64,000 nt of DNA from Octopus sinensis (GCF_006345805.1 NC_043014.1:36766001-36830000); one strand, 5' to 3'; shown: positions 27,501-60,047, numbered from the stretch's first letter. The notes: generated by a model from the letters alone, not told the origin. Translations and numbers: made by a program.

Positions 27501-28726
27501 ACCCTTCTAGAAAGTGTTATGAAATGTGTGTGCTGTTGAATAAATATACACTATACTGTTGTATACTTCCAGCAAGAAACAGTAATCAAGGATTCTTTAT
27601 ATGTATACCTTCAATCACCGCATGTACTTGCCCGCTTCAATTCTGAGGATCTATGGTGCTTATTCTATTGCTCTATAAATATGTATGTATAATTGTTAAA
27701 GAGGGCAACAAATATTAAGGCAAAGCAAACATCTCAAATCATGTACATTGTAATTATTATTGGAAAAAATTCAAACTCTTACAGCTGTTTCTGGGATATC
27801 CCAGAGTATGGGTTATTCCGTCACCGGAGACAATTATGGAAAATGAAGATAGTATAGATTAATGGAATGATGACATAGAGGACAGGAGTAAAGGAATAAG
27901 GGATATGATATACTCTGGGATATCCCAGAAACATCGGGAAGACTTTGAATTTTTTCCAATAATAATAATGTATATGACTTGGAGTACACATGCAAGGCAA
28001 TTTCTTATGTATGACAAGTAAATCCAAATACGTATAGAGAAAATTACATCTTTTAATTGCAGAATTCACCTTACAAAGCTGACAATTGCTTCAGCTGAAT
28101 TAAAATATTTATATATAGAAAATATGATTGAAATTAATTTTTCGAAAAATACACGTTAACGCAACGTTATCAAGGTGATCCAAAATTAGTTAAATTCAAA
28201 GTAAACTCATGAAATATTTCCAGTACACGAACGTATACATAAAGAACGCTAGAAAGAAATATAATCTAATAAAAGCTATTTTTTGTATTCGATTATCGGT
28301 GACGTCACTGGATAATGAAAGTATAAAAAATAAACATAAGAATTCTACGTTACAACAATTAGAGAGACGTCATGCAAATTAGTTATCTATTTATTGAATT
28401 TAATAAACAATTTTAGAGAAATCATGCTTATCATATAACATATAAAAAGCAATTACAATCAAAAATAGGAATATTTAAAAGCCTTCCGAAATTTGTGGCA
28501 ACATTTCATTGTAAAATTCCTATCAAAATTTAATAAAATTAATTTAGAAGTAATTACGCAGCCTGCTTTCCAACCACATAGCTCCGGGTTCAGTCCCACT
28601 GCGTGCCACCTTGAACAAGTGTCTTGTGAGTGAATTTGGTTATCGGAAACTAGAAGAAACCCGTCGAATATGCGTGTGTGTCTTCTAGTATGCATCTTGT
28701 ACTATGTATATATGTGTATGAATGTG

Positions 28727-28769
<43 letters not shown>

Positions 28770-29572
28770 GTACATATATATATATAGTTGCATTACTATG
28801 TATGTACGCTTATGTATATACGTGTGAGTTTGAGTGTGTGTGTGTTTATGTGTGTGTGTATTTGTGTGTGTGTGCCTGTGTGTGTGTGGTGTGTGTGTGT
28901 GCGCGCGTGTTTGCACTCTGCGACGATCCACATTCAAATTCCACCATCCCCAGTCCATTGTTCGTTGCGAACGTTTAGGCTAAGTTCTGCTGGAAAGCTG
29001 TTTACATCAGTCTGGAATCCGTTGACGTGCTCGATTTAGTCCGTCACATACCTATGTAGAACCTTGATACTCACTGACTCTATGCAAGTGCTATCAATCG
29101 AACGGTTTCTACCCAGTGGGTTTCAGAGATCAGGAGCTAGTATGTACAACGCATCCTTTGTGATTTGAGTTGAGGAAATGATCAATGATTATTTCCACTA
29201 CAATTATGCCGTATGACTTTATCCGTTCGCCTTCTAACATATAACCTACTGCCTTTTCTGATCTACTACCCTCTTTTGCTACCACTTTGTTAAAACTAAC
29301 AAATGAAATTGGGAACATTCAGAATGGCATTCTTAACAATATTCCTAATTACTAATTACATAGAAATATACATGCATACCCGCATGCAAAAGACATATAC
29401 GCGCATGAAAATATAGATATACGCATGTCAAAAATATGCAAAAACTAATACACATACGTATTTAAAACTAAGCTTGCTCACTGATCTGAGGCTAATAGCA
29501 ACAATTTTTTTTTAAAAAGCGATAAATATTAACCAATGTGAACCAACGATAAGTAGCTCAGCTTTTGTTACG

Positions 29573-29877
29573 TTATTCCAAACTGATAGTTCGCGCAATT
29601 TCTGTTCCAAATGCTTTGCATGTGAAAGTTGTGTAATCTAAGTCTTTCTCTGTTACAAGGTAGTAATACTCCGCATCTATCGCAACAAAGCATTTGTCAC
29701 TATGTGGAACTATCTGTATTTTATAGAGCTTACGCCATAGATTGGGAGTCCCTATGGTCCATTTAAAAGTGACAGTTGGTGGAGAAGGTAACCCAACAAT
29801 TGCTGTACATCTGATGATCCATGGTCTTACGAAGGTTTTATCACTGACCATTTCCAGAGACTGTATATGAGATTTCG
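29573..29877 (-). CDS. Distal-cassette C exon, intact, 7 aa different from the proximal copy; no V exon of its own in the cassette
   Basis: Same acceptor, 305 nt open frame, TAA stop. Confidence 0.65.
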
Positions 29878-30571
29878 CTGGAAAAAAATGAATCAATATA
29901 TGTAATTCTTTCAACAATAAGCCTCACAATAAAATATTGTATATTTACACTGATGAAAATTACAATCTTCGTACAACACTGAAATATTTAACAACACTTC
30001 CGATGGACCCTTTTCGTTACTGGATCCAAGTGTTCAAATATCTAACTTTATAACAAAAGCAATGCTTAAGCAACGTAGAGCCAGACTAATCTGACATAAC
30101 TATAGAGACACAGATACATCATGCACGTATATACATGTATGTATGTATGTCTAAGTGTAATTAATCATATCGTATGTATGTATGACATATAGTATGTAAT
30201 CATGATGATATGATACAGTATCATGTAGTATGTGATAGTGTTGATGTATGTATGTATGATGCCATATGTATGTATGTATGTATGTATGTAGTGTATGTAT
30301 GTATGTATGTGCATGTTTGAAAGACGCTCCTTTTCTTTCAATAGAGTCTTCCTTGGAAAACAACTCCAATGGACGTGAGTTGTTTCCGGGCTTTCCATCT
30401 ACTTTTCTACTGTTTTCGTCACTAAGGAATATTTTTAGATGTTTGGGAGAATTAATTTTTCAAAACCCTTTACTTTCATATCTATTTTATCTCTCCTCAG
30501 CTCTTATCTGGACACAATCATTTAGAAAATGCGAACATTTGAAACGATGTACTCTTTACACTTTTACTTGT

Positions 30572-30930
30572 TTCAGTCAGTTGACTGCGGCCATGCTGGA
30601 GCACCGCCTTTAGTCGAGCAAATCGACCCCGGGACTTAGTCTTTATAAGCCCAGTACTTATTCTATCGGGCTCTTTTGCCGAACCGCTAAGTGACGGGGA
30701 CGTAAACACACCAGCATCGGTTGTCAAGCAATGCTAGGGGAACAAACACAGACAGACACAGACACACACACACACATATATATATACATATATACGACAG
30801 GCTTCTTTCAGTTTGCGTCTACCAAATCCACTCACAAGGCATTGGTCGGCCCGGGGCTATAGCAGAAGACACTTTCCCAAGATGTCACGCAGTGGGACTG
30901 AACCCGGAACCATGTGGTTGGTTAGCAAGC
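30572..30930 (-). mobile_element. Second SINE family, repeated in each cassette (~34556-34915, ~38547-38900); partial copies at 4654-4770, 6830-7050, ~28555
   Basis: Head ggttccgggttcagtcccactgcgtg and tail gcggccatgctggagcaccgcc. Confidence 0.8.
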
Positions 30931-31788
30931 TAGATGTGTGAACTTTCGTAAACAAAGTTTGTATAGAATTGGAAGCTACCTGTTGGAATGTTTCAGCTAT
31001 AACGAAAAAACACATTCAAAGCGTTCTGAGACTATAAGGACACTGCAATTTATCCAACATGCTCCAAATTTTATCGATGATGATCTCGGAAAATCAATGG
31101 GAGCCATCACTAAATAAAGTCTGCAATACACGGGAAATCCGTTTTATCCATACCAAACAGTTATTTAAGAAGGTTGAAAACCTTCACGAACATGGCAAGC
31201 TTTCGTTCTTCTCTGATCAGAAGAATCTCAACCAGATGGTTATGTACTGATTCTTCTGATGCGTTGAGGTGCTAAGACCTGAATAGATGAAGTACGAAGT
31301 GGAAGTCCACCTTCACACAAATCCATGTAACTCAAGAATGGATTTCAGGTAATCTTTACTATCATGCACCGCAAAACTTGTATTTCGACAAACATTTCTT
31401 TTTCTTATCGAATTACATTTCGCTTTCGCTAGATTAGAGTCATTTTATTAAATTACCAAATATTCCTTAAATGTTTCTCGCACCTTATACATCAATTAGC
31501 GAAGCATCCACTTCAATCTCCTGGAAGTAGTACAACTATGCACTGTACATATTTTCTAGAGTACTTTCAACACACTTAGAAATGTTGAACTTCTAAATGT
31601 CTCAGAGAGACATGAGCGGTGGTGGGGCGATATAGTGGTTGTATACTGTCAACTCAGCGTGACAAAGGAATCACACCACTGCTATTTAGCCCTAGGAAGC
31701 ATCGACGCTTCCTGTCGGCTTTGACACATTTCCTGTGTCCTTATATTTGCAAAGGGGAGGCAAGGACCCCCGCCAGCTAGGATTAGCA

Positions 31789-31834
31789 CCTGAAGACATG
31801 CATGTTTCTGGGTCTTGCCCATCATCAGTCCAGG
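31789..31834 (-). ncRNA. Type I hammerhead ribozyme, distal cassette
   Basis: Identical to 39760-39805. Confidence 0.9.
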
Positions 31835-31861
31835 GTAGTAAGTCCTGCTAGCTGAGATGGC

Positions 31862-32357
31862 TATATAAAACTGTAGTTGTGTGAGTGTCTGTCCCCTTCG
31901 ATTTAGATTCCTAACTACTCCACATTTTGCGGTGCAGTTTAACCAAATTTGGGTATCTTATAGTTGTGATTCATATCGAGCCCGTCTGAGTATTAGCGCG
32001 CGTCTACGATGAGTCTACGATTTTAAAAATAATTTAACATCATTTTTTATTCCATTTTAATGCATAATTTTTCGTGTGTCAATGGCGGCGGAGTTGGCGT
32101 CCATGGTAACACCTGCACCTGTTTGCCTTCCCCTTCCTCGTGAAGCTGTGGGGAAGGGAGTGTAAGGAAATCAACGTCGTAAAGCGTTGTCAAGGAGACC
32201 AGCATTCTTTTAGAACAACGACTTCATGGCTTGAAGACACCAAAATAGAAATGGCTAAGAAAGCCCGAATTGACATCTATAAGGGAAGTAACTCTCTAAA
32301 AATGCTTATATAGTTATTTCCCTTACAAACCCGAGCAACGCCGGGCGATACGGCTAG
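31862..32357 (+). mobile_element. Non-autonomous Helitron at cassette junction 1
   Basis: tatataaaactg head, hairpin cccgagcaacgccggg, CTAG|T end. Confidence 0.85.
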
Positions 32358-32827
32358 TAATCTAATAAAAGCTATTTTTTGTATTCGATTATCGGTGACG
32401 TCACTGGATAATGAAAGTATAAAAAAATAAACATAAGAATTCTACGTTACAACATAGAGAGACTTCATGCAAATTAGTTATCTATTTATTGAATTTAATA
32501 AACAATTTTAGAGAAATCATGCATTATCATATAATATAAAAACAATTACAATCAAAAATAGGAATATTTAAAAGCCTTCCGAAATTTGTGGCAACATTTC
32601 ATTGTAAAATTCCTATCAAAATTTAATAAAATTAATTTAGAAGTAATTACGCAGCCTGCTTTCCAACCACATAGCTCCGGGTTCAGTCCCACTGCGTGCC
32701 ACCTTGACAAGTGTCTTGTGAGTGAATTTGGTTATCGGAAACTAGAAGAAACCCGTCGAATATGCGTGTGTGTCTTCTAGTATGCATCTTGTACGTATGT
32801 ATATATGTGTATGAATGTGTATGTGTA

Positions 32828-32860
<33 letters not shown>

Positions 32861-33671
32861 GATATATATATAACGTACATATATTATAGTTGCATTACTA
32901 TGTATGTACGCTTATGTATATACGTGTGAGTTTGAGTGTGTGTGTGTTTATGTGTGTGTGTATTTGTGTGTGTGTGCCTCTGTGTGTGTGTGTGTGTGTG
33001 TGTGTGCGCGTGTTTGCACTCTGCCGACGATCCACATTCAAATTCCACCATCCCCAGTCCATTGTTCGTTGCGAACGTTTAGGCTAAGTTCTGCTGGAAA
33101 GCTGTTTACATCAGTCTGGAATCCGTTGACGTGCTCGATTTAGTCCGTCCACATACCTATGTAGAACCTTGATACTCACTGACTCTATGCAAGTGCTATC
33201 AATCGAACGGTTTCTACCCATGGGTTTCAGAGATCAGGAGCTAGTATGAACAACGCATCCTTTGTGATTTGAGTTGAGGAAATGATCAATGATTATTTCC
33301 ACTACAATTATGCCGTACGACTTTATCCGTTCGCCTTCTAACATATAACCTACTGCCTTTTCTGATCTACTACCCTCTTTTGCTACCACTTTGTTAAAAC
33401 TAACAATGAAATTGGGAACATTCAGAATGGCATTCTTAACATATTCCTAATTACTAATTACATAGAAATATACATGCATACTCGCATGCAAAAGACATAT
33501 ACGCGCATGAAAATATAGATATACGCATGTCAAAAATATGCAAAACTAATACACATACGTATTTAAAACTAAGCTTGCTCACTGATCTGAGGCTAATAGC
33601 AACAATTTTTTTAAAAAGCGATAAAATATTAACCAATGTGAACCAAGATAAGTAGCTCAGCTTTTGTTACG

Positions 33672-33975
33672 TCATTCCAAACTGATAGTTCGCGCAATTT
33701 CTGTTCCAAATGCTTTGCATGTGAAAGTTGTGTAATCTAAGTCTTTCTCTGTTACAAGGTAGTAATACTCCGCATCTACCACAACAAAGCATTTGTCACT
33801 ATGTGGAACTCTCTGTATTTTATAGAGCTTAAGCCATAGATCGGGAGTCCCTATGGTCCATTTAAAAGTGACAGTTGGTGGAGAAGGTAACCCAACATTG
33901 CTGTACATCTGAAGATCCATGGTCTTACGAAGGTTTTATCACTGACCATTCCCAGAGACTGTATATGAGATTTCG
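33672..33975 (-). pseudogene. Middle-cassette C exon with a 1-nt deletion near 33897 (real frameshift or consensus error)
   Basis: Otherwise matches 37651-37955; caacattg vs caacaattg. This cassette has many other 1-nt deletions. Confidence 0.6.
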
Positions 33976-35772
33976 CTGGAAAAAAATGAATCAATATATG
34001 TAATTCTTTCAACAATAAGCCTCACAATAAATATTGTATATTTACACTGATGAAAATTACAATCTTCGTACAACACTGAAATATTTAACAACACTTCCGA
34101 TGGACCCTTTTCGTTACTGGTTCCAAGTGTTCAAATATCTAACTTTATAACAAAAGCAATGCTTAAGCAACGTAGAGCCAGACTAATGACAATAACTATA
34201 GAGACACAGATACAATCATGCACGTATATACATGTGTATGTATGTATGTATGTATGTATGTATGTATGTATGTATGTATGTATGTATGTATGTGCATGTT
34301 TGAAAGACGCTCCTTTTCTTTCAATAGAGTCTTCCTTGGAAAACAACTCCAATGGACGTGAGTTGTTTCCGAGCTTTCCATCTACTTTTCTACTGTTTTC
34401 GTCACTAAGGAATATTTTTAGATGTTTGGGAGAATTAATTTTTCAAAACCCTTTACTTTCATATCTATTTTATCTCTCCTCAGCTCTTATGCTGGACACA
34501 ATCATTTAGAAAATGCGAACATTTGAAACGATGTACTCTTTACACTTTTACTTGTTTCAGTCAGTTGACTGCGGCCATGCTGGAGCACCGCCTTTAGTCG
34601 AGCAAATCGACCCCGGGACTTAGTCTTTATAAGCCCAGTACTTATTCTATCGGGCTCTTTTGCCGAACCGCTAAGTGACGGGGACGTAAACACACCAGCA
34701 TCGGTTGTCAAGCAATGCTAGGGGGACAAACACAGACAGACACACACCCCACACACACATATATATATACATATATACGACAGGCTTCTTTCAGTTTGCG
34801 TCTACCAAATCCACTCACAAGGCATTGGTCGGCCCGGGGCTATAGCAGAAGACACTTTCCCAAGATGTCACGCAGTGGGACTGAACCCGGAACCATGTGG
34901 TTGGTTAGCAAGCTAGATGTGTGAACTTTCGTAAACAAAGTTTGTATAGAATTGGAAGCTACCTGTTGGAATGTTTCAGCTATAACGAAAAAAACACATT
35001 CAAAGCGTTCTGAGACTATAAGGACACTGCAATTTATCCAACATGCTCCAAATTTTATCGATGATGATCTCGGAAAATCAATGGGAGCCATCACTAAATA
35101 AAGTCTGCAATACACGGGAAATCCGTTTTATCCATACCAAACAGTTATTTAAGAAGGTTGAAAACCTTCACGAACATGGCAAGCTTTCGTTCTTCTCTGA
35201 TCAGAAGAATCTCAACCAGATGGTTATGTACTGATTCTTCTGATGCGTTGAGGTGCTAAGACCTGAATAAATGAAGTACGAAGTGGAAGTCCACCTTCAC
35301 ACAAATCCATGTAACTCAAGAATGGATTTCAGGCAATCTTTACTATCATGCAACGCAAAACTTGTATTTCGACAAAAATCTCTTTTTCTTATCGAATTAC
35401 ATTTCGCTTTCGCTAGATTAGAGTCATTTTATTAAATTACCAAATATTCCTTAAATGTTTCTCGCACCTTATACATCAATTAGCGAAGCATCCACTTCAA
35501 TCTCCCGGAAGTAGTACAACTATGCACTGTACATATTTTCTAGAGTACTTTCAACACACTTAGAAATGTTGAATTTCTAAATGTCTCAGAGAGACATGAG
35601 CGGTGGTGGGGCGATATAGTGGTTGTATACTGTCAACTCAGCGTGACAAAGGAATCACACCACTGCTATTTAGCCCTAGGAAGCATCGACGCTTCCTGTC
35701 GGCTTTGACACATTTCCTGTGTCCTTATATTTGCAAAGGGGAGGCAAGGACCCCCGCCAGCTAGGATTAGCA

Positions 35773-35818
35773 CCTGAAGACATGCATGTTTCTGGGTCTT
35801 GCCCATCATCAGTCCAGG
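35773..35818 (-). ncRNA. Type I hammerhead ribozyme, middle cassette
   Basis: Identical to 39760-39805. Confidence 0.9.
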
Positions 35819-35845
35819 GTAGTAAGTCCTGCTAGCTGAGATGGC

Positions 35846-36343
35846 TATATAAAACTGTAGTTGTGTGAGTGTCTGTCCCCTTCGATTTAGATTCCTAACT
35901 ACTCCCACATTTTGCGGTGCAGTTTAACCAAATTCGGGTATCTTATAGTTGTGATTCATATCGAGCCCGTCTGAGTATTAGCGCGCGTCTACGATGAGTC
36001 TACGATTTTAAAAATAATTTAACATCATTTTTTATTCCATTTTAATGCATAATTTTTCGTGTGTCAATGGCGGCGGAGTTGGCGTCCATGGTAACACCTG
36101 CACCTGTTTGCTTCTCCCCTTCCTCGTGAAGCTGTGGGGAAGGGAGTGTAAGGAAATCAACGTCGTAAAGCGTTGTCAAGGAGACCAGCATTCTTTTAGA
36201 ACAACGACTTCATGGCTTGAAGACACCAAAATAGAAATGGCTAAGAAAGCCCGAATTGACATCTATAAGGGAAGTAACTCTCTAAAAATGCTTATATAGT
36301 TATTTCCCTTACAAACCCGAGCAACGCCGGGCGATACGGCTAG
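35846..36343 (+). mobile_element. Non-autonomous Helitron at cassette junction 2
   Basis: Near-identical to 31862-32357. Confidence 0.85.
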
Positions 36344-36809
36344 TAATCTAATAAAAGCTATTTTTTGTATTCGATTATCGGTGACGTCACTGGATAATGA
36401 AAGTATAAAAAATAAACATAAGAATTCTACGTTACAACAATTAGAGAGACTTCATGCAAATTAGTTATCTATTTATTGAATTTAATAAACAATTTTAGAG
36501 AAATCATGCATATCATATAACATATAAAAAGCAATTACAATCAAAAATAGGAATATTTAAAAGCCTTCCGAAATTTGTGGCAACATTTCATTGTAAAATT
36601 CCTATCAAAATTTAATAAAATTAATTTAGAAGTAATTACGCAGCCTGCTTTCCAACCACATAGCTCCGGGTTCAGTCCCACTGCGTGCCACCTTGAACAA
36701 GTGTCTTGTGAGTGAATTTGGTTATCGGAAACTAGAAGAAACCCGTCGAATATGCGTGTGTGTCTTCTAGTATGCATCTTGTACGTATGTATATATGTGT
36801 ATGAATGTG

Positions 36810-36846
<37 letters not shown>

Positions 36847-36953
36847 GTACATATATATATATAGTTGCATTACTATGTATGTACGCTTATGTATATACGT
36901 GTGAGTTTGAGTGTGTGTGTGTTTATGTGTGTGTGTATTTGTGTGTGTGTGCC

Positions 36954-36985
<32 letters not shown>

Positions 36986-37650
36986 TGTTTGCACTCTGCC
37001 GACGATCCACATTCAAATTCCACCATCCCCAGTCCATTGTTCGTTGCGAACGTTTAGGCTAAGTTCTGCTGGAAAGCTGTTTACATCAGTCTGGAATCCG
37101 TTGACGTGCTCGATTTAGTCCGTCACATACCTATGTAGAACCTTGATACTCACTGACTCTATGCAAGTGCTATCAATCGAACGGTTTCTACCCAGTGGGT
37201 TTCAGAGATCAGGAGCTAGTATGAACAACACATCCTTTGTGATTTGAGTTGAGGAAATGATCAATGATTATTTCCACTACAATTATGCCGTACGACTTTA
37301 TCCGTTCGCCTTCTAACATATAACCTACTGCCTTTTCTGATCTACTACCCTCTTTTGCTACCACTTTGTTAAAACTAACAAATGAAATTGGGAACATTCA
37401 GAATGGCATTCTTAACAATATTCCTAATTACTAATTACATAGAAATATACATGCATACTCGCATGCAAAAGACATATACGCGCATGAAAATATAGATATA
37501 CGCATGTCAAAAATATGCAAAAACTAATACACATACGTATTTAAAACTAAGCTTGCTCACTGATCTGAGGCTAATAGCAACAATTTTTTTAAAAAGCGAT
37601 AAAATATTAACCAATGTGAACCAAAGATAAGTAGCTCAGCTTTTGTTACG

Positions 37651-37955
37651 TCATTCCAAACTGATAGTTCGCGCAATTTCTGTTCCAAATGCTTTGCATG
37701 TGAAAGTTGTGTAATCTAAGTCTTTCTCTGTTACAAGGTAGTAATACTCCGCATCTACCACAACAAAGCATTTGTCACTATGTGGAACTCTCTGTATTTT
37801 ATAGAGCTTAAGCCATAGATCGGGAGTCCCTATGGTCCATTTAAAAGTGACAGTTGGTGGAGAAGGTAACCCAACAATTGCTGTACATCTGAAGATCCAT
37901 GGTCTTACGAAGGTTTTATCACTGACCATTCCCAGAGACTGTATATGAGATTTCG
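37651..37955 (-). CDS. Gene B exon 3 (proximal cassette): C-like Ig domain ending ISLE*
   Basis: Acceptor ttttttccag|CG (G+CG = Ala), 305 nt. Contains PWIFRCTAIVGLP, FKW and KDLDYTTFTC. Confidence 0.85.
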
Positions 37956-39547
37956 CTGGAAAAAAATGAATCAATATATGTAATTCTTTCAACAATAAGC
38001 CTCACAATAAAATATTGTATATTTACACTGATGAAAATTACAATCTTCGTACAACACTGAAATATTTAACAACACTTCCGATGGACCCTTTTCGTTACTG
38101 GTTCCAAGTGTTCAAATATCTAACTTTATAACAAAAGCAATGCTTAAGCAACGTAGAGCCAGACTAATCTGACAATAACTATAGAGACACAGATACAATC
38201 ATGCACGTATATACATGTGTATGTATGTATGTATGTATGTATGTATGTATGTATGTATGTATGTATGTATGTATGTATGTATGTGCATGTTTGAAAGACG
38301 CTCCTTTTCTTTCAATAGAGTCTTCCTTGGAAAACATCTCCAATGGACGTGAGTTGTTTCCGAGCTTTCCATCTACTTTTCTACTGTTTTCGTCACTAAG
38401 GAATATTTTTAGATGTTTGGGAGAATTAATTTTTCAAAACTCTTTACTTTCATATCTATTTTATCTCTCCTCAGCTCTTATGCTGGACACAATCATTTAG
38501 AAAACGCGAACATTTGAAACGATGTACTCTTTACACTTTTACTTGTTTCAGTCAGTTGACTGCGGCCATGCTGGAGCACCGCCTTTAGTCGAGCAAATCG
38601 ACCCCGGGACTTAGTCTTTATAAGCCCAGTACTTATTCTATCGGGCTCTTTTGCCGAACCGCTAAGTGACGGGGACGTAAACACACCAGCATCGGTTGTC
38701 AAGCAATGCTAGGGGGACAAACACAGACAGACAGACAGACACACACATATATATATACATATATACGACGGGCTTCTTTCAGTTTGCGTCTACCAAATCC
38801 ACTCACAAGGCATTGGTCGGCCCGGGGCTATAGCAGAAGACACTTTCCCAAGATGTCACGCAGTGGGACTGAACCCGGAACCATGTGGTTGGTTAGCAAG
38901 CTAGATGTGTGAACTTTCGTAAACAAAGTTTGTATAGAATTGGAAGCTACCTGTTGGAATGTTTCAGCTATAACGAAAAAAACACATTCAAAGCGTTCTG
39001 AGACTATAAGGACACTGCAATTTATCCAACATGCTCCAAATTTTATCGATGATGATCTCGGAAAATCAATGGAGCCATCACTAAATAAAGTCTGCAATAC
39101 ACGGGAAATCCGTTTTATCCATACCAAACAGTTATTTAAGAAGGTTGAAAACCTTCACGAACATGACAAGCTTTCGTTCTTCTCTGATCAGAAGAACCTC
39201 AACCAGATGGTTATGTACTGATTCTTCTGATGCGTTGAGGTGCTAAGACCTGAATAGATGAAGTACGAAGTGGAAGTCCACCTTCACACAAATCCATGTA
39301 ACTCAAGAATGGATTTCAGGCAATCTTTACTATCATGCACCGCAAAACTTGTATTTCGACAAACATTTCTTTTTCTTATCGAATTACATTTCGCTTTCGC
39401 TAGATTAGAGTCATTTTATTAAATTACCAAATATTCCTTAAATGTTTCTCGCACCTTATACATCAATTAGCGAAGCATCCACTTCAATCTCCCGGAAGTA
39501 GTACAACTATGCACTGTACATATTTTCTAGAGAACTTTCAACACACT

Positions 39548-40036
39548 TAGAAATATTGAATTTCTAAATGTCTCAGAGAGACATGAGCGGTGGTGGGGCG
39601 ATATAGTGGTTGTATACTGTCAACTCAGCGTGACAAAGGAATCACACCACTGCTATTTAGCCCTAGGAAGCATCGACGCTTCCTGTCGGCTTTGACACAT
39701 TTCCTGTGTCCTTATATTTGCAAAGGGGAGGCAAGGACCCCCGCCAGCTAGGATTAGCACCTGAAGACATGCATGTTTCTGGGTCTTGCCCATCATCAGT
39801 CCAGGGTAGTAAGTCCTGCTAGCTGAGATGGCTGCAACCGCTTTTCAAATATATAATATTTTCAGTGAAATTTATTCACTGGTTACCAAAATTAGAAATA
39901 TTGAATTTTTAAAATGTCTCAGAGAGACATGAGCGGTGGTGGGGCGATATAGTGATTGTATACTGTCAACTCAACGTGACAGTCCCGTAAAGGGAATCAC
40001 ACCACCTCTATTTAGCCCTAGGAAGCATCGAATATA
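39548..40036 (-). mobile_element. Retrozyme-like insertion (~1.4 units of a ~346-bp repeat) carrying the hammerhead
   Basis: Flanked by direct repeat tttcaacacact (39536-39547, 40037-40048). Internal direct repeat 39548-39672 vs 39894-40031. Absent from the matching intron of gene A. Confidence 0.7.
39760..39805 (-). ncRNA. Type I hammerhead ribozyme, intact core, in intron 2 of gene B
   Basis: Minus strand: cctgga CTGATGA tggg caaga ccca GAAA catgcatg TC ttcagg. 6-bp stem I, 4-bp stem II, palindromic stem III, GUC site. Confidence 0.9.
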
Positions 40037-40184
40037 TTTCAACACACTGAAAAACAGAAATCTTAACACAAAAATAAGGTTGAACATGCCCAAGGCAACG
40101 CATGAAGAGCCTGCAATAAAAATACGCTTCTGAAAATCAATCAATAATGGAACTGCATTAGTAAAAGCAAGTAGTAAAACTGAC

Positions 40185-40505
40185 CTTTCATAAACTTAGC
40201 TTTCGAATTTTCTGAGGAAGTGCCACATTTGTAGTATGCTACATCTTTGCAAGTGGGATTTCGTTTCCAACAGGTAACTACACCTTCATTACAATAAGTT
40301 AAAGTACACTTGAAACCATCCTTACTGAATTTTGTTTCAAATATGCGTGTGGGCCTGTGGCATTCAAGATATACAACTATAACATCGTTTCTAAATAGTT
40401 TGAAATTAAGACGATTCCCCGCATTATACTGACATGTCATAGTTATTTGAGATGTCTCTCCAAAGCGAATACCATCATCAGGCGTCATTTTCGTTATCGC
40501 AAAAT
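40185..40505 (-). CDS. Gene B exon 2: V-like Ig domain (FAITKMTPDDG...TMTC...VTCWKRNPTCKDVAYYKC...FMK)
   Basis: Acceptor ttacttgtag|AT, donor AAAG|gtcagt, 321 nt. About 61% aa identity to the gene A V exon by hand alignment. Confidence 0.85.
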
Positions 40506-40558
40506 CTACAAGTAATAAATAAATGAGAGATAGATTTTTTTTTAATATATCATTTTAG

Positions 40559-40810
40559 AAGAAGAAGAAGAAGAAGAAGAAGAAGAAGAAGAAGAAGGAG
40601 GAGGAGGAGGAGGAGGAGGAGGTGGAGGAGAGGGAGGAGAAGAAGAAGAAGAAGAAGAAGAGGAGGAGGAGGAGGAGGAGGAGGAGAGGGAGGAGGAGGA
40701 GAAGAAGAAGAGAAGAAGAAGAAGGAAAGGGAGAAGAAGAAGAAGAAGAAGAAGAAGAAGGAGGAGGAGGAGAAGAAGAAGAAGAAGAAGAGGAAGAAGA
40801 AGGAGAAGAA

Positions 40811-40863
<53 letters not shown>
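40559..40863. repeat. (GAA/GGA)n tract upstream of the gene B V exon
   Basis: Direct inspection. Confidence 0.95.
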
Positions 40864-40865
<2 letters not shown>

Positions 40866-41102
40866 ATAAATAACGCCACTGAACAAGATTAACGAAAAGC
40901 AAACGACAGACCAAGCTAAGCGAGGAAACGGCAAGAAGTAAATGAGAAGAAGAGAGTGAACACAAGTCAAACGAAGGAAAAGGGAAAAGAGTGACAGTAG
41001 AAAACAAGGAAAGGTCTGCAGAGAAAATGAGTGAGGAGTTAGAAGCAAAAAAAACAATCAAAAAGAAAAGGAGCTGTCGAAAACAAAAGAAATAGACAGT
41101 AA

Positions 41103-41697
41103 GGCGGCGAGTTGGCAGAAATGTTAGCACGCCGGGCGAAATGCTTAGCGGTATTTCGTCTGTCGTTACGTTCTGAGTTCAAATTCCGCCGAGGTCGACT
41201 TTGCCTTTCATCCTTTCGGGGTCGATAAATTAAGTACCAGTTACGCACTGGGGTCGATGTAATCGACTTAATACCTATGTCTGTCCTTGTTTGTCCCCTC
41301 TGTGTTTAGCCCCTTGTGGGTAATAAAGAAATAGGTATATCGTCTGTCGTTACGTTCTGAGTTCAAATCCCGCCGAGTTTGACTTTGCCTTTCATCCTTT
41401 CGGGGTCGATAAATTAAGTACCAGTTACGCATTGAGATCGATGTAATCGACTTAATCCCTTTGTCTGTCCTTGTTTGTCCCCTCTGTGTTTAGCCCCTTG
41501 TGGGTAATAAAGAAATAGGTATATCGTCTGTCGTTACGTTCTGAGTTCAAATTCCGCCGAGTTTGACTTTGCCTTTCATCCTTTCGGGGTCGATAAATTA
41601 AGTACCAGTTACGCATTGGGATCGATGTAATCGACTTAATCCCTTTGTCTGTCCTTATTTGTCCCCTCTGTGTTTAGCCCCTTGTGGGTAAAAAGAA
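41103..41697 (+). mobile_element. Same SINE with its ~183-bp body triplicated, in intron 1 of gene B
   Basis: One head followed by three copies of tcgtctgtcgttacg...aaagaaa. Confidence 0.85.
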
Positions 41698-41885
41698 ACA
41701 TATATACCTGCCTGTACCGATATTCGGAAGCATGTACAGAAGAAGAATTATGTGTGAGACAGGAATAATAGGATGAAAAACAATTACACAAAATCATAGG
41801 TAATCAAAGGATAAAGGAGGCAAGACTAAAACTGAGTCGTGGAGGTGAAAAAAATAATATGTGACTGATTTAAGTCTTGACTTAC

Positions 41886-41934
41886 AGGCGGAGGTGTAAG
41901 AAGCCATCATCAGTATTTTTATAACTAACAGCAT
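41886..41934 (-). CDS. Gene B exon 1: signal-peptide exon MLLVIKILMMASYTSA
   Basis: ATG at 41934, GTAAGT donor, 49 nt, paralogous to 61936-61984. Confidence 0.8.
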
Positions 41935-42159
41935 TGTTGGTGTTATCGACAGATGGTGAAATGAGTGTCGGCTCCCAGCAACTGAAATATAACCAGTAAA
42001 TCCGCATGGTTTTATTTTGTACGATGTGGAAGGAATGAACGAAGAAAATTACAAAAAACATGATGATAGAATGTGTATGAACGTAGGCAAACTAATATCC
42101 TTCGCACCAGTAAAAGAATGTAAAACACCTGTTGCCATTATGATACTGTGAATACATCA

Positions 42160-42410
42160 ATAGAAAGCATTATAATTGAATTACATAGTGTGAATTATTG
42201 CGTAATAACTCGTCTATTATAAGTAGTGATTGATTTACGAACATAGCACAAATAGAAAGTTTGAAAGTTCTGAAACTGGTTTCTTTCTTTCCCTCGTTTT
42301 TATTAAATTTTTGGCTTTTATATTAAAAATGATCATTTCTTTAAAATTATTCTACAAAATGATGTATTTACAATATTTGTCTATGAAAAGTATTTTCGAT
42401 ATTGCATACA
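42160..42410 (-). promoter_or_regulatory. Conserved upstream block of gene B (putative promoter)
   Basis: Aligns with 62370-62630. Confidence 0.45.
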
Positions 42411-42461
42411 TATATATGTGGGTGGGTGTATGTTGTGTGGTGTGTGTGTGTGTGTGTGTGT

Positions 42462-51390: not shown

Positions 51391-51689
51391 TCATTCCATA
51401 TAAATTATTCGCGAAATTTTATCTCCAAATATTTCGCATGTATAATTTGTTATGCCTAAATCTTCCGCTCTTACAAAATAATCCGCGCTTACCTCAACAA
51501 AGCATTTGTCACTAGATGGAACTTTCACTGTTTCTTGGTCAAAAGACATGCCGTTAGACCTCTCTATATCCCATACAAAACTGGCATCACCTTGAGAGGG
51601 TAACCCAACAATTGCTGAACATCTGATGATCCATGGATCTAGGTTTATATTATTATGGAACAATTTCAGACTCTTTATACGAGATCTCA
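51391..51689 (-). CDS. Gene A exon 3: C-like Ig domain, terminal coding exon (PWIIRCSAIVGLP...FVW...DKC...EDLGITNYTC...YME*)
   Basis: Acceptor ctctttctag|TG (G+TG = Val) in phase with exon 2. Cys...Trp...Cys Ig pattern. Stop at the same position as in gene B. Confidence 0.85.
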
Positions 51690-51744
51690 CTAGAAAGAGA
51701 GTGAATTAAAATATGTAAATCTTTAAACAATAAAATATTGGATT

Positions 51745-52076
51745 TCGTTTTTGGAATTCGTTTGCAAGATTCTTTATGTGAGTTCGTGTGTTGAAGCATA
51801 TTCTGTTGTGTCTGGGGAGAGTCATTTTCTTTTTGTGCCTTATAATTTAACACACTCACCGGTAAAATTTCCACTTATTTCTTATTCTTATTTTCCTAAA
51901 ATTTTCGTTGCGTCTTGCAATCTTTTCAATAGCCTTGACTCTTGACTATTGAAAAGGTTGCAAGACACAACGAAAATTTTAGGAAAATAAAAATAAGAAA
52001 TAAGTGGAAATTTTACCGGTGAGTGTTTTAGATTATAAGGCACAAAAAGAAAATGACTCTCCCCAGAAACAACAGA
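51745..52076. repeat. Foldback insertion (~135-bp arms, 13-nt spacer) in intron 2 of gene A
   Basis: Arms ~51798-51933 and 51947-52082; 12-bp flanking duplication aaaatattggat. Confidence 0.85.
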
Positions 52077-52699
52077 AAATATTGGATGTTTTCACTGATA
52101 AAAATTACAATCTTCATACAACACTGAAATATTTAACAATGCTTTCGATGGACCCTGTCAGATGATGCTTGAAGAATGCCAATCAGACAATAACTATACA
52201 GACACAGATACAATCATACACGTATATACATATGTATGCATGTTTTATAACGTGGATCTGTATATGTCACCTTAGTGTCGTGCACTAATACAATGTATCA
52301 CGGAACGGGTTAGACACAAACTGTCTCCAGTTGATGTATTCGCAAATACTCTACCAGCAACTGTAACCAATATAACAACTTCTCAACAATTTTCCTGCGA
52401 CACCACGAACTCACAAACGACACCTTTCGGCTTACTGAGATTTTTCTTGTGCTACTTATACGAGTTCAGCTAGTCCATTCTCACAGCTGTTATGAAACTC
52501 GCCGTAACATCTCCCCTTTTGAGATTTGACTTCTGCAGGAAATGCAACTTGTTTATTTAATTTTATTCTTTTTTTTTTTCATCATCACCTTTCTCTTTTT
52601 TGAGATTTTAATTTCCTCTGAAGTTTTAATGCTTCTTTGGCTGGGGGACTATTTCTAGTTGTTCTGTTTGTTTATGTTTTCTACTGCTGATCCGCTTAG

Positions 52700-53565
52700 A
52701 TTCAACCTCTTTTGGCGTTGAAACATCTAACAAGTCATAACAAGCTTTCATCGGTATTTCTTCTCTTTCTTCAGTATATCTAGTCTTCAACTGGTTCAAA
52801 TGCCGTTTCTGCTATCCTATTTGACCTTTTATTATGTACATCATAATTATTCTTTTCGTCACTATACCGTCCTCCCAACATTGTCTTCCATTTTCATATA
52901 TTTTGAAATGAATTTTATCTCCCACATTAAAATAATTTGTTTTATTTCTTGGGTTTTCCCTATAAGTTTTTTGTTGGTAACTATTTATCAATAATTGATT
53001 TCATCTTCCGGGCAAACATTAGCTCTGCAGGTGACTTGCCTGTAGAGGTGTTCGGGTTAAGTGTTACCCTGTAAACTCTTAAGAATTGAGTCAGTGTTGC
53101 ATCATTGCCTAATTCCTTTCCTGCTTTTTTTAGTACCCGTTTAAATATATCTTCGAACCTTTCTGCTTGCCCATTCGATCTCTCACAGAAATTTCAAATT
53201 CGTACCCCGAAAACTGCATTCCGTTATCCGATAATATTGTGTTCGGGACACCGTATCGCGCAAAAAGTTCGTGAAGAAACTTCATTGTTACCTTCAATGT
53301 TGGTTGACTGCATTTACATATCTCAGACTACCTGGTGTAGCTCCCTACTATGATCAGATAATACGCGCCGTTTACCAGTCCAGCAAAATCTATATGTAGC
53401 CTGGACCACGGACTGCCTGTCTGAGGCCACGATTGGAATTTCGCCGGTGGTGACTTTGCTGCGAGAGCACAACCTCTGCAAGATATCACCATTTGTTCAA
53501 TATCATGGTCCATAGCAGACCAATACACGTGACTCCTCATTACTGATTTCATTCTTGAAAAACCT
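52700..53565 (-). mobile_element. Gypsy integrase relic in intron 2 of gene A
   Basis: HPGFSRMK...CRGC zinc finger, RLHIDFAG, FARYGVP...SDNG. Confidence 0.85.
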
Positions 53566-54687
53566 GGGTGTCCCATATGAAATTAACTTAATACAGGCTT
53601 TGGTAGTGTGGCTGGCACTACAACTCTTTGTGCATACATCAACACATTATCACAAAGAGAAAAATGGTTCACATTTATTTTCTTTTACCTTCAACGTTTC
53701 TTTCCTCTTTGCAATAAATTTGTCATTCTCCGATTTTAGTTTTATATCTTAAACAGTTACTTACAGCACCCGAATGAAATTCAGGTGTCGGAGTGGAAAT
53801 TTAGTGCACGAGGACATGCGATACAAGTAGCATCAGATGTCCAAGTAGAAGAAAGCTAATTAACATCTGCAAATACATAGGAAAACCGTTTGATCTATAT
53901 CAAACAGTTATTTAAGGAGCTTAAAAACCCTCACGACCATGGCTAGCTTTCGTCCTTCTCAGATAGTTATGAGCAGATGTTTTGATGCGTTGAGGTGCTG
54001 GAAACAGCTAATTAAGCCCTGTATAGATGAGTTACGAAGTGGACGGTCATATGTGTTTCGACATAACCTTTGCATCGTCACACAAACCCATGTAGTCCAA
54101 GAATGGATGATAAGCAATCCTTACAATCATGCAACACAAAACTTGTGGCCTCCAATCTCCTCAGATGATCTACTAGGTTTCAAACATTGCTGAAAGAGAA
54201 ACTCATAAAGATCCTCATAATACCACAGCTTCACTGAAGGCCGGTATTGTCCAAATGACGACCGAAATTGATAAAGTCCATTTAATGCAGGCATGTCAAC
54301 AATTCCGGTTTCGCATCGAAGAATCAAAGGTGAAAACGGATTTACAGAATAATAGTTTTATAAGAAAGCTTATTGAGAACTCATGCACAATTTTTTATCG
54401 AACTACATTTCGTTTTCGCTAGATTAGAGTAATTTTATTAAATTACCAAATATGTCCTTAAATGTTTCTCGCACCTTATACATCAATTAGCGAAGGCATC
54501 CACTTCATTCTCCCGAAAATAGCACAACTACACACTGTACATATTTTCTAGATTACTTTAAACACTATGAAAAACAGAAATCTAAAAACAAAAGTAAAGT
54601 TGCACAGGAAAAACATGCAATAAAAATAACACTTCTGAAAATCAATAATAATGGAAATGCATTAGTGAAAAAAATAGTAAAACTAAC

Positions 54688-55008
54688 CTTTCATAAACCT
54701 AGGTTTCGAAACTGCTATCATAGTGCCACATTTGTAGTGTGCTACATCTCTGCAAGTGGGATTTCGTTTCCAGCAGGTAACCTCACCTTTATTGCAATAA
54801 GCTAAAGTACAGTCGAAACCATCCTTATAGATAATTCTTTTAAATCTTTTTGTGGACTTGTAGTATTCCATATATACAACTAAAACTTCGTTTCTCAATA
54901 GTTTGAGATTAAGAAGGTTCTTCATCTTATACCGACATGTTATAGTCATTTTAGATGTCATTCCAATGTCAATACCATTAGCGGGCGTCATTTTTGTTAT
55001 AGCAAAGT
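54688..55008 (-). CDS. Gene A exon 2: V-like Ig domain (FAITKMTPANG...ITC...VTCWKRNPTCRDVAHYKC...FMK)
   Basis: Acceptor cttacag|AC, donor AAAG|gttagt, 321 nt open frame. B-strand Cys and D-x-A-x-Y-x-C F-strand motif. Same length as the gene B V exon. Confidence 0.85.
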
Positions 55009-55060
55009 CTGTAAGTAGTAAACAAATGAGAGAAAGATCTTTAAAAAATATATAATTTTA

Positions 55061-55228
55061 GAAGAAGAAGAAGAAGAAGAAGAAGAAGAAGAAGAAGAAG
55101 AAGAAGAAGAAGAAGAAGAAGAAGAAGAAGAAGAAGAAGAAGAAGAAGAAGAAGAAGAAGAAGAAGAAGAAGAAGAAGAAGAAGAAGAAGAAGAAGAAGA
55201 AGAAGAAGAAGAAGAAGAAGAAGAAGAA
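55061..55228. repeat. Pure (GAA)n tract upstream of the gene A V exon
   Basis: Direct inspection; same position as in gene B. Confidence 0.95.
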
Positions 55229-55404
55229 TATATATTAGAAGAAATGAGGTACTCAGAAATTCGGATGGAAAAAATTGCCGACAGTCCATGAGAGGTTACA
55301 TTTCTGAAGTGACATACAGGTTGCGGTGAATAAATGTCTTCTAAATTACGTAAAATTGAAAATAACGGTGACATCTCCATTTTAACAGATATATTTACCA
55401 AAAT

Positions 55405-55481
<77 letters not shown>

Positions 55482-55484
<3 letters not shown>

Positions 55485-57430: not shown

Positions 57431-57551
57431 GGATGAGCAATTAATACTGGTCATCCTTTTTGCTAGAAGAAGATCTGCTATGGTCTTATATGATACACCA
57501 CTGGTTTTCAATTCATATTAATCAAATTAATATTCAATTTTTCACCCTTAT

Positions 57552-57606
<55 letters not shown>

Positions 57607-58254
57607 TAGCAATTCGTATAAAATTGCATCAATGACTTGAACTTGAATAAGTGGTTTCACATAAATGGGGATACATTAAAAAGGTTTGTTGTTATTATTA
57701 TTACTGTTTGACTATTATAATCACGTTTGTTGGTTCCTCGTCAGGGAAACGTTGTTGTGTTGCATTTGTTAAATAATTGTAAACTGTAACCCTCCCCCTT
57801 TCGGAGAAGGGGCTTTGGTTATTGTTTTAAAATTGAATTGTGTCCCTGTTTGGGGAAATTGACAATATTTTCACCGTCTTTACGGAAGCATTTTTGTTAA
57901 AGTGTCTTCGATAGAAGAAAGTCCCAAAATGAATTTCGCTGCAGCCGTACACTTCTATACAAGAGGGAGGACAAGATCCAATTGATCGAAATTTCAAGAG
58001 ACGGGCCTACAATTCCAGTCTGTTATATATTTTGAGTATTGTTATCACTAGCGATATCAAGATATAACTTTCTATTTTGTATTTTATGTGTAGATGTATA
58101 TATATATATAGATGTACATGTAATATGTACACATATATATATACACATATATACATGCATAATATATCTACCCATACACACACACGTACACACACACACA
58201 CATACATAGAGGCAGGTGTGGCTGTGTGGTAACAAACTACGTTCGAAGATACTG

Positions 58255-59551: not shown

Positions 59552-59552
<1 letters not shown>
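58255..59552 (+). mobile_element. Helitron 3' part with frameshifted PIF1 helicase
   Basis: ASSGIAATLLPGGRTAHSTFKLP and LSGDFRRTIPV motifs; hairpin cccgagcatcgccggg then CTAG|T terminus. Confidence 0.95.
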
Positions 59553-59589
<37 letters not shown>

Positions 59590-59782
59590 TAGATTTTTTG
59601 CCCACACACTCATGTGCATACATACGTATATACGTATAGGCATACGCACATATAGAAATTTATATTTGCAGATATATACGCGTGCATTAATACATGTACA
59701 CTCATAGCCTTCCATTCACATACATACATACGCGCTTGTGTGTGTGCACATATATCCACGCTTACACATACACGTGCATATA

Positions 59783-60012: not shown

Positions 60013-60047
<35 letters not shown>

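What the first reader, a model, noticed from the sequence alone, without database searches (positions are those of the whole stretch)
28262..40505. One leader-V pair upstream of three alternative C-exon cassettes
Seen: the tandem unit copies the C exon and its 3' region but not the V or leader exons. All three keep the same phase-1 acceptor, so each could splice in frame to the single V. Inference: alternative terminal-exon choice could give one V domain with different C domains, an isotype-like layout convergent on IgH or Dscam-style logic. The alternative is that the distal copies are orphan pseudo-exons.
Basis: partly seen in the sequence, partly recalled or inferred. Interest (0 to 1): 0.8.

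Follow-up and report, generated by a model that had tools for sequence, protein, structure and literature searches.

The report
Triplicated last exon of octopus Ig-like gene
An octopus-specific gene for a small secreted protein with two antibody-like domains carries three tandem copies of its last exon; one copy is broken, one has diverged, and nothing available here shows that any copy beyond the first is used.

Summary
The gene is on the minus strand. It has a leader exon (41934..41886, outside the stated range), one V-like exon (40505..40185), and a ~4-kb cassette present three times (28262-32357, 32358-36343, 36344-39833). Each cassette carries a C-like terminal exon with an identical phase-1 acceptor and a stop codon.

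An AlphaFold model (pLDDT 92.8) and Foldseek matches (CD4 D1D2, Fab chains) confirm a V-like plus C-like Ig pair. The family is restricted to octopods and is undescribed.

Three points change the picture.
- The middle exon has a 1-bp deletion, so it cannot encode a C domain.
- An independent O. vulgaris assembly has two cassettes and O. bimaculoides has one. The middle copy is a proximal/distal chimera, as unequal crossing-over would produce.
- The distal exon is intact in both genomes. It differs from the proximal exon by 7 substitutions, all non-synonymous, a higher density than in the flanks. The whole gene, however, evolves at dN/dS of about 1.3-1.5.

The best reading is a young, copy-number-variable duplication of the last exon. 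Use of the distal exon as an alternative terminal exon is plausible (about 0.3) but untested. It is not a three-way isotype system.

The parts
41935..42416 (-). Conserved block upstream of the leader ATG; putative promoter and 5'UTR of gene B
   Evidence: About 80% identical to the block upstream of the paralogue's leader (61985-62645). It is the only conserved upstream sequence between the two genes. The promoter role is inferred, not tested.
41886..41934 (-). Leader (signal-peptide) exon, coding part: MLLVIKILMMASYTSA plus 1 base, phase-1 donor CCT|GTAAGT
   Evidence: The same peptide and donor occur in paralogue gene A (61984..61936). The motif MLLxxxILMMxSYxSA starts most full-length family members.
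40506..41885 (-). Leader-V intron (1.38 kb), holding three tandem 184-bp SINE copies (41150-41698) and a ~300-bp (TCT)n tract (40557-40862) that ends about 50 nt before the V acceptor
   Evidence: The paralogue has the same (TCT)n tract before its V exon (55060-55228).
40185..40505 (-). V-like Ig exon, 321 nt, phase 1-1 (acceptor tgtag|AT, donor AAAG|gtcagt)
   Evidence: It has the C..(69 aa)..D-V-A-Y-Y-K-C motif. It forms domain 1 of the AF2 model (pLDDT 92.8), which matches CD4 D1 and Fab V domains. It is a single copy within this gene.
39834..40184 (-). Unique first part of the V-C intron, not duplicated
   Evidence: Similarity between units stops exactly at 39833.
36344..39833 (-). Cassette 3 (proximal to V): 1.88 kb of intron, the C exon, and 1.3 kb of 3' sequence
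37651..37955 (-). Proximal C-like terminal exon (101 codons plus TGA). Its amino-acid sequence is identical to the O. vulgaris proximal exon and 70% identical to the only C exon found in O. bimaculoides
35847..36343 (.). 497-bp junction filler between cassettes 2 and 3, absent from the single-copy flanks
   Evidence: The same filler is at the other junction and at the one junction in O. vulgaris. It contains a 192-bp copy of window 5889-6077.
32358..35846 (-). Cassette 2 (middle), a chimera: proximal-like at 33005-33951, distal-like at 34346-34747
   Evidence: Ten diagnostic sites shared with O. vulgaris show one switch between 33951 and 34346. This copy is absent from the O. vulgaris assembly.
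33672..33975 (-). Middle C pseudo-exon, identical to the proximal exon except for a 1-bp deletion at 33896/33897. It reads ...FRCTAMLGYLLHQLSLLNGP*
31863..32357 (.). 495-bp junction filler between cassettes 1 and 2
28262..31862 (-). Cassette 1 (distal)
29573..29877 (-). Distal C-like terminal exon, intact. It differs from the proximal exon by G9E, F22I, D46N, L49R, R56I, V66A, V67I and by stop TGA>TAA
   Evidence: Five of the seven changes are shared with the O. vulgaris distal exon.
51391..61984 (-). Paralogue gene A, intact, with one C exon: leader 61984..61936, V 55008..54688, C 51689..51391
   Evidence: Amino-acid identity to gene B is 61% for V and 42% for C.

Best explanation
This is a young, copy-number-variable tandem duplication of the last-exon cassette of an octopod-specific gene. 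The gene encodes a 224-aa secreted protein: a signal peptide, a V-like Ig domain and a C-like Ig domain.

The inferred history is as follows. After the split from O. bimaculoides, which has one cassette, a 3.6-kb segment was duplicated. The segment comprises the distal three-quarters of the V-C intron, the C exon and its 3' region. About 0.5 kb of filler lies at the junction. This gave the two-cassette state seen in O. vulgaris. Unequal crossing-over between the distal and proximal cassettes then produced the third, chimeric middle cassette seen in this window.

The V-proximal exon is the working last exon. It gives the orthologue-like protein and has not changed between the two genomes. The middle exon is dead because of a frameshift. 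The distal exon is intact but shows no purifying constraint. It is most likely unused, or used only in the minority of transcripts that read through the first terminal exon.

Shown here: the anatomy, copy numbers in three genomes, the chimeric middle copy, the fold, and the substitution pattern. Inferred: which exon is used.
For: Copy number is 1 in O. bimaculoides, 2 in O. vulgaris GCA_951406725.2 and 3 in this window. The filler is the same at all junctions, with clean breakpoints.

The middle unit switches from proximal-like to distal-like once, between 33951 and 34346. That is the configuration expected for the three-copy product of unequal crossing-over.

The middle exon is frameshifted.

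Between the window and O. vulgaris, the proximal exon has 0 changes in 306 nt. The distal exon has 3, against about 3.4 expected at the unit-wide 1.1% rate.

The three acceptors and at least 55 nt upstream of them are identical, so no sequence feature favours skipping the first one.

The gene itself is real. Its reading frame, cysteines and splice sites are kept across about 12% neutral divergence. The model has pLDDT 92.8, with 418 Ig-fold matches.
Against: Fixed differences between the distal and proximal cassettes are concentrated in the exon. Five of 10 diagnostic sites fall in 306 of 3482 bp (binomial P = 0.0009), or P = 0.019 if only the central 1.7 kb is counted. All 7 coding differences are non-synonymous. 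The exon is 2.6% diverged against 0.9% for the rest of the unit. This points towards selection on an expressed distal exon.

The distal exon keeps its frame and its stop codon in two genomes, although over 306 nt at 1-2.6% divergence that has little statistical power.

Each cassette carries the same candidate poly(A) hexamers, so the distal exon is fully equipped as a terminal exon.
Confidence: 0.55

Rival explanations
1. This is a working alternative-last-exon system. Transcripts from the single leader-V pair end either in the proximal or in the distal C exon. That gives two secreted isoforms with the same V-like domain and C-like domains differing at 7 residues. It would be a minimal isotype-like arrangement with two variants, not three, because the middle exon is broken.
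For: The acceptors are identical and in phase, and each cassette has its own stop and the same downstream AATAAA/ATTAAA hexamers. The distal exon is intact in two genomes, and four or five derived amino-acid changes are shared by both. There is an excess of non-synonymous fixed differences in the exon relative to the flanks. The whole family evolves fast at the protein level (dN/dS 1.3-1.6), so a second C variant could be favoured.
Against: There is no transcript or protein evidence. Given the gene-wide dN/dS of about 1.3-1.5, the excess of changes is only marginal: about 3 expected against 7 observed. Change is very asymmetric, about 6 changes on the distal lineage against 1 on the proximal. 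Since the two genomes split, the distal exon has changed at the neutral rate, which fits a lack of constraint equally well. The first poly(A) hexamers lie more than 1 kb after each stop, so 3'-end usage cannot be judged. No paralogue examined has a C-only duplication.
Confidence: 0.3
2. The third (middle) cassette is an assembly expansion, not a real copy. The true state in this genome would be two cassettes, as in O. vulgaris.
For: The middle exon is identical to the proximal exon apart from 1-bp deletions, and single-base deletions are a typical error of long-read assembly. The only other assembly of a close relative has two copies.
Against: The middle unit is not a copy of one neighbour. 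It is a clean proximal/distal chimera with a single switch point, as unequal crossing-over predicts. It has about 6 private substitutions, and its proximal-like half differs from the proximal unit by about 0.3%. Both of its junctions carry the authentic filler. The two-cassette state is certainly real, because it occurs in an independent assembly.
Confidence: 0.12
3. The distal cassettes are remains of complete V-C gene copies whose leader and V exons were later lost. This would be whole-gene tandem duplication, as elsewhere in the array, rather than a C-only duplication.
For: The family grows by whole-gene tandem duplication. There is gene A in the window and at least three more V-C pairs in the O. 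vulgaris locus. The 497-bp junction filler is foreign to the unit.
Against: Unit boundaries are sharp and lie inside the V-C intron. The filler has no similarity to any V exon, leader or promoter block. The cassettes are about 99% identical, whereas neighbouring whole-gene paralogues are 42-61% identical in protein.
Confidence: 0.03

Closest known systems
Intragenic tandem duplication by unequal crossing-over giving copy-number alleles (textbook example from my own knowledge: the human haptoglobin Hp2 allele, a 1.7-kb internal duplication)
   Same: A segment of a few kb containing coding exon(s) is repeated head to tail inside one gene. Further copies arise by misaligned recombination between repeats. 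Copy number differs between closely related genomes (1, 2 and 3 here).
   Different: Here the duplicated exon is the terminal exon and has its own stop codon. Extra copies therefore do not lengthen the protein. They can only be ignored or used instead of the first.
Alternative last exons, including IgM/IgD co-expression from one long IgH transcript (my own knowledge)
   Same: One V-encoding 5' part lies upstream of tandem constant-region units that arose by duplication, each able to terminate the mRNA. Selection would be by splicing and polyadenylation choice.
   Different: IgH constant regions are multi-exon and strongly diverged, and their use is documented. Here the units are single exons 93-100% identical in protein, one is broken, and there is no evidence of use. 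There is no somatic V assembly and there are no switch regions. Octopus microsatellites lie upstream of each C exon, but these were not tested as anything more than microsatellites.
Dscam1-type arrays of mutually exclusive Ig-domain exons (my own knowledge)
   Same: Tandemly duplicated exons encode variants of an Ig domain behind a common upstream exon.
   Different: Dscam exons are internal and rejoin a downstream constitutive exon. They number in the dozens and are chosen through docking/selector RNA pairing. Here the exons are terminal and carry stops. Only two are intact. No complementary segment of 14 nt or more links the unique post-V intron to the cassettes.
Two-domain V-plus-C Ig-superfamily modules such as CD4 D1D2, VCAM-1 D1D2 and antibody light chains
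   Same: The AF2 model of the orthologue (pLDDT 92.8) matches these best (Foldseek E = 2.7e-7 to 1e-4, 418 hits at E <= 1e-3). The family profile hits only Ig light chains and Fc-gamma receptors in the PDB. The exon structure is leader | V | C, all in phase 1.
   Different: Sequence identity is 10-17%. No Pfam Ig model reaches its threshold. There are extra conserved cysteines: 5 in domain 1 and 3 in domain 2. The family is found only in octopods.
Secreted invertebrate IgSF families proposed as immune recognition molecules (mollusc FREPs, amphioxus VCBPs; my own knowledge)
   Same: These are lineage-specific, tandemly arrayed and fast-evolving secreted proteins with N-terminal V-like Ig domains.
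   Different: There is no fibrinogen or chitin-binding domain. No sequence relationship was detected. An immune role for the octopus family is a guess.

Membership tests
Immunoglobulin superfamily, V-like plus C-like two-domain module | Two beta-sandwich domains of Ig topology | tested here: met
   The AF2 model of orthologue P0001, built with a 15-sequence family alignment, has pLDDT 92.8 and pTM 0.81 with 14 beta strands. Foldseek against the PDB gives CD4 D1D2, Fab L/H chains, VCAM-1 D1D2 and sponge RTK Ig domains, with 418 hits at E <= 1e-3.
Immunoglobulin superfamily, V-like plus C-like two-domain module | Canonical B-F cysteine pair, strand-C Trp, and the D-x-A/G-x-Y-x-C motif in strand F | tested here: met
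   Numbering follows P0001. Domain 1 has C19...C88 (69 residues apart) with invariant D82, Y86 and C88, but no invariant Trp. Domain 2 has C125, W141 and C188, all invariant in 15 family members.
Immunoglobulin superfamily, V-like plus C-like two-domain module | Significant match to a curated Ig sequence model | tested here: not met
   The best Pfam hit is Ig_2 at E = 0.099 for the window protein and 0.017 for any family member, below the gathering score. The PDB profile search is marginal: its best hit is E = 9e-4, and 59 of the 60 listed hits are Ig-type chains. Membership therefore rests on the fold, not on sequence.
Alternative-last-exon gene (isotype-like choice of C exon) | Two or more terminal exons, each with a usable 3' splice site in the right phase and its own stop codon | tested here: met
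   This is met for the proximal and distal exons. The middle exon has the splice site but a frameshift.
Alternative-last-exon gene (isotype-like choice of C exon) | A polyadenylation signal after each terminal exon | tested here: inconclusive
   There is no AATAAA or ATTAAA within 1 kb of any stop. The first ones lie 1.04-1.18 kb downstream and are the same in all three cassettes. The real 3' ends are unknown.
Alternative-last-exon gene (isotype-like choice of C exon) | Transcripts joining the common exon to each terminal exon | not testable with these tools
   No transcript-derived protein of this gene is in the protein collection.
Dscam-type mutually exclusive exon array | Internal cassette exons that rejoin a downstream constitutive exon | tested here: not met
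   Each C exon ends in a stop codon with no donor site at its end (...GAATGA|CGTAAC).
Dscam-type mutually exclusive exon array | Docking site paired with selector sequences upstream of each variant exon | tested here: not met
   No inverted repeat of 14 nt or more links the unique intron segment 39834-40184 to the cassette intron.
Tandem segmental duplication expanded by unequal crossing-over (copy-number variant) | Head-to-tail units with the same junction at every boundary | tested here: met
   Both junctions in the window and the single junction in O. vulgaris carry the same ~497-bp filler and the same breakpoints.
Tandem segmental duplication expanded by unequal crossing-over (copy-number variant) | The extra unit is a chimera of its neighbours, and copy number differs between genomes | tested here: met
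   At diagnostic sites the middle unit is proximal-like at 7 consecutive sites and then distal-like at 3, with one switch. Copy number is 1, 2 and 3 in three genomes. An N gap at 13505-15474 in O. bimaculoides locus L001 leaves a small doubt about the single copy there.

The most novel reading that the evidence does not exclude
Octopuses have an undescribed, fast-evolving family of secreted V-plus-C Ig-like proteins. In this member, diversity would be created by duplicating only the C-domain last exon, with transcripts choosing between a conserved proximal C and a positively selected distal C. The number of cassettes would vary between individuals. That would be an invertebrate case of one V joined to alternative constant domains, convergent with IgM/IgD-type alternative constant-region use.
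Probability: 0.25. Interest if true: 0.6.

Novelty: new member of a known kind. Interest (0 to 1): 0.35.

Why it matters
If the distal exon is used, this would be a very young example of how a constant-region 'isotype' can arise: duplication of a terminal exon followed by rapid amino-acid divergence. Its state could be followed across three genomes (1, 2 and 3 copies).

Even if it is not used, the locus is a clean natural example of copy-number growth by unequal crossing-over, with an identifiable crossover interval.

The wider gene family may be of more lasting interest. It comprises octopod-only secreted or membrane-anchored proteins with a V-like and a C-like Ig domain. They sit in tandem arrays, evolve at dN/dS of about 1 or above, and have a strongly conserved signal peptide. 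The databases call them 'uncharacterized', and I found no paper on them.

Tried and rejected
- **Pfam scans.** Scans of the window protein and of 15 family members gave no significant Ig hit. Classification needed the structure model.
- **First AF2 run.** A 6-row alignment gave pLDDT 37 and was unusable. The second run with 15 family members succeeded.
- **Spliced proteins rejected.** I used the O. bimaculoides orthologue plus single-exon translations instead.
- **A second case in the family.** P0007 looked like a V-C-C protein. Its locus shows it is a gene model that fuses two neighbouring V-C genes, so it was rejected.
- **Gene conversion as the source of the distal changes.** Conversion from a diverged paralogue is rejected. 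Only N46 is shared with gene A, and a conversion tract would have brought many more differences.
- **Docking/selector pairing.** None was found.
- **Literature.** Three searches, including one by LOC identifiers, found nothing on this family.
- **Second alignment-based search.** The second homologous-protein search, with the family alignment, returned only 4 proteins. The exhaustive representative search gave 41.

Full report
**What is in the sequence**

The window is octopus DNA. It is 98-99% identical to O. vulgaris chromosome OX597833.1 (assembly GCA_951406725.2, locus L002). It is about 87% identical to O. bimaculoides (locus L001).

Self-comparison shows a head-to-tail triplication between 28262 and 39833. 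The units are 28262-32357, 32358-36343 and 36344-39833. Gapped BLAST alignments are 97.6-98.5% identical. At substitutions alone the units are 98.9-99.3% identical. This is far beyond chance.

**The gene**

All coding features are on the minus strand.

- The V-like exon runs 40505..40185 (321 nt). Its acceptor is tgtag|AT and its donor is AAAG|gtcagt. Both are in phase 1.
- Each unit holds one 305-nt exon: proximal 37955..37651, middle 33975..33672, distal 29877..29573. Each begins after an identical acceptor (tttttttccag|CG) and ends in a stop codon.
- The V donor leaves G. With CG from the C exon this makes an Ala codon, and the frame continues to the stop.
I found it 1.38 kb upstream of the V exon, at 41934..41886. 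It encodes MLLVIKILMMASYTSA plus one base, with a phase-1 donor CCT|GTAAGT.
- The leader is conserved in the paralogue in this window. It also matches the N-terminus of most full-length family members.

The product is 224 aa: a signal peptide, domain 1 and domain 2, with no membrane anchor.

**Are the domains V and C?**

Pfam does not reach significance.

An exhaustive profile search of 1.8 billion representative proteins found only 41 relatives. Every member whose source was looked up is from Octopus or Argonauta. They are labelled 'uncharacterized' or 'Ig-like domain-containing'.

A 15-sequence family alignment gave an AlphaFold model of the O. bimaculoides orthologue. That protein is 71% identical to the window protein. 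The model has pLDDT 92.8 and pTM 0.81 and is all-beta in two domains.

Foldseek against the PDB returns CD4 D1D2 first (E = 2.7e-7). Fab light and heavy chains, VCAM-1 D1D2 and sponge Ig domains follow, with 418 hits at E <= 1e-3. The family profile also hits almost only Ig light chains and Fc-gamma receptors by sequence.

Domain 1 has the 69-residue cysteine spacing and the D-x-A-x-Y-x-C motif of V-type domains. Domain 2 has the C...W...C pattern of constant-type domains. The labels are therefore justified by fold, not by sequence.

**Corrections to the observation**

- The middle exon is identical to the proximal one except for a 1-bp deletion (TT>T at 33896/33897). It reads ...FRCTAMLGYLLHQLSLLNGP* and cannot make domain 2. 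At most two C variants exist.
All are non-synonymous: G9E, F22I, D46N, L49R, R56I, V66A and V67I. It also has a stop-preserving TGA>TAA change.
- The window holds a second, intact V-C gene with one C exon: leader 61984..61936, V 55008..54688, C 51689..51391. Its V is 61% and its C 42% identical to gene B. A V remnant lies near 8053..7917.

**History**

O. bimaculoides has one C exon after its V. An N gap 1.1 kb further downstream leaves a small doubt. O. vulgaris has two cassettes and this window has three.

The O. vulgaris proximal exon is identical in protein to the window's. Its distal exon shares five of the seven distal changes. The first duplication therefore predates the split of these two genomes and is not an assembly artefact.

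Breakpoints are sharp. Every junction, including the one in O. vulgaris, carries the same ~497-bp filler foreign to the unit. Part of the filler copies window 5889-6077.

I took the ten sites where the distal and proximal units differ consistently in both genomes. At these sites the middle unit is proximal-like at 33005-33951 and distal-like at 34346-34747, with a single switch. Misaligned crossing-over between a proximal and a distal unit gives exactly this configuration in its three-copy product.

The middle unit also has about six private substitutions. I conclude that the third copy is probably real and fairly recent. Confirmation by spanning reads is still needed.

**Is the distal exon used?**

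This cannot be tested here.

Sequence evidence in favour:
- Five of the ten fixed differences fall in the exon, which is 8.8% of the aligned unit (P = 0.0009). Restricted to the central 1.7 kb that holds all ten, P = 0.019.
- The exon is 2.6% diverged against 0.9% for the rest of the unit.
- All seven coding changes alter the protein.
- Each cassette carries the same acceptor and the same candidate poly(A) hexamers.

Sequence evidence against:
- The whole gene evolves at dN/dS 1.26-1.44 against O. bimaculoides, and 1.59 between the paralogues' V exons. That alone raises the expected number of amino-acid changes to about 3, against 7 observed.
- Polarised with O. bimaculoides, about six changes are on the distal lineage and one on the proximal.
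- Since the two genomes split, the distal exon has changed at the neutral rate (3 in 306 nt), while the proximal exon has not changed at all.
- The acceptors are identical, so nothing in the sequence favours bypassing the first terminal exon.
- From general knowledge, a constitutive terminal exon normally captures nearly all transcripts.

I therefore rank 'young duplication; the proximal exon does the work; the distal exon is unused or minor' first (0.55). I rank 'true two-way alternative last exon' second (0.3).

**Comparison with known systems**

The arrangement works most like an intragenic copy-number duplication of the haptoglobin Hp2 type. The difference is that the repeated exon is terminal.

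The resemblance to IgH is limited to the layout. If the distal exon is used, it would resemble IgM/IgD-type alternative constant-region choice.

It fails the defining features of a Dscam-type array. The exons are terminal, not internal, and there is no docking/selector pairing.

No other family member examined has a C-only duplication. The one apparent case, P0007, is a fused gene model.

**Verdict**

The structural observation is real, and I have refined it. The isotype-like interpretation is not excluded for two variants, is wrong for three, and is untested.

The gene family itself is undescribed and is probably the more interesting lead. It is octopod-only, secreted or anchored, built of a V-like and a C-like Ig domain, tandemly arrayed and fast-evolving.

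Noticed in passing
window 51391-61984 (minus strand): An intact paralogous gene (gene A) with the same leader | V | C exon plan and phases but a single C exon. Its leader-V intron is about 6.9 kb, against 1.4 kb in gene B. Its V domain lacks one of the family's cysteines (YMEYYKS where gene B has YLECHRP).
   Followed up: partly
window ~7917-8053 (minus strand); orthologous to L002 32766-32886: Short degraded V-like remnant (MTPADGIEVGVT... TCWKANPTCEAV) with no C exon detected downstream. It is probably a dead family member.
   Followed up: no
window 13172-20712: A 7.5-kb stretch that is absent from the O. vulgaris assembly, where only about 250 bp lies between the flanking matches. It is bounded by 1.26-kb direct repeats (13182-14437 and 19449-20703, 97.5% identical). 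It has very low GC (22-28%) and strong strand skew. It looks like an LTR-type element insertion that differs between the two genomes. No Pfam domain was found in its ORFs.
   Followed up: partly
window 40557-40862 and 55060-55228: A (TCT)n/(AGA)n microsatellite sits about 50 nt upstream of the V-exon acceptor in both paralogues; the gene B copy is about 300 bp long. It is in effect a giant polypyrimidine tract conserved in position. Whether it affects splicing is unknown.
   Followed up: no
window 41150-41698; also 23250-23480, 44932-45171, 48439-48669, 50957-51191: A 184-bp SINE-like element (containing GTTCAAATTCCGCCGAG...) is present as three tandem copies inside the leader-V intron. Dispersed copies in both orientations lie around the locus.
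   Followed up: no
window 31863-32357 and 35847-36343: The ~497-bp filler at the duplication junctions contains a 192-bp copy of window 5889-6077 (92% identical) and a 70-bp match to L002 41047-41115. This is templated insertion from nearby sequence, as in replication-based rearrangements, or else an unrecognised repeat.
   Followed up: partly
L002 44881-49014 and P0002; L003 6001-36198 and P0007: Deposited O. vulgaris gene models in this family are often chimeras. P0002 joins gene B's V exon to exons of a paralogue 35 kb away and skips both C exons. P0007 fuses two adjacent V-C genes. P0003 and P0004 fuse four or five genes. The O. bimaculoides RefSeq orthologue (P0001) starts at an internal Met, because the leader lies beyond an assembly gap.
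   Followed up: partly
family alignment A4; proteins P0011, P0014, P0015, P0034, P0045: Some family members continue after the C-like domain. They add a Thr/Pro-rich stalk plus either a hydrophobic C-terminus (...SKWILVVNLILLLL..ISR, GPI-signal-like) or a transmembrane segment with a cytoplasmic tail. The family therefore has both secreted and anchored forms. Eight cysteines are conserved, 5 in domain 1 and 3 in domain 2. Besides the two canonical intradomain pairs, that would allow one inter-domain or intermolecular disulfide.
   Followed up: no
window 23524-24454 (plus strand): Fragmentary LINE-type ORFs, with a weak match to endonuclease-reverse transcriptase (Exo_endo_phos_2, E = 0.0056).
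   Followed up: partly
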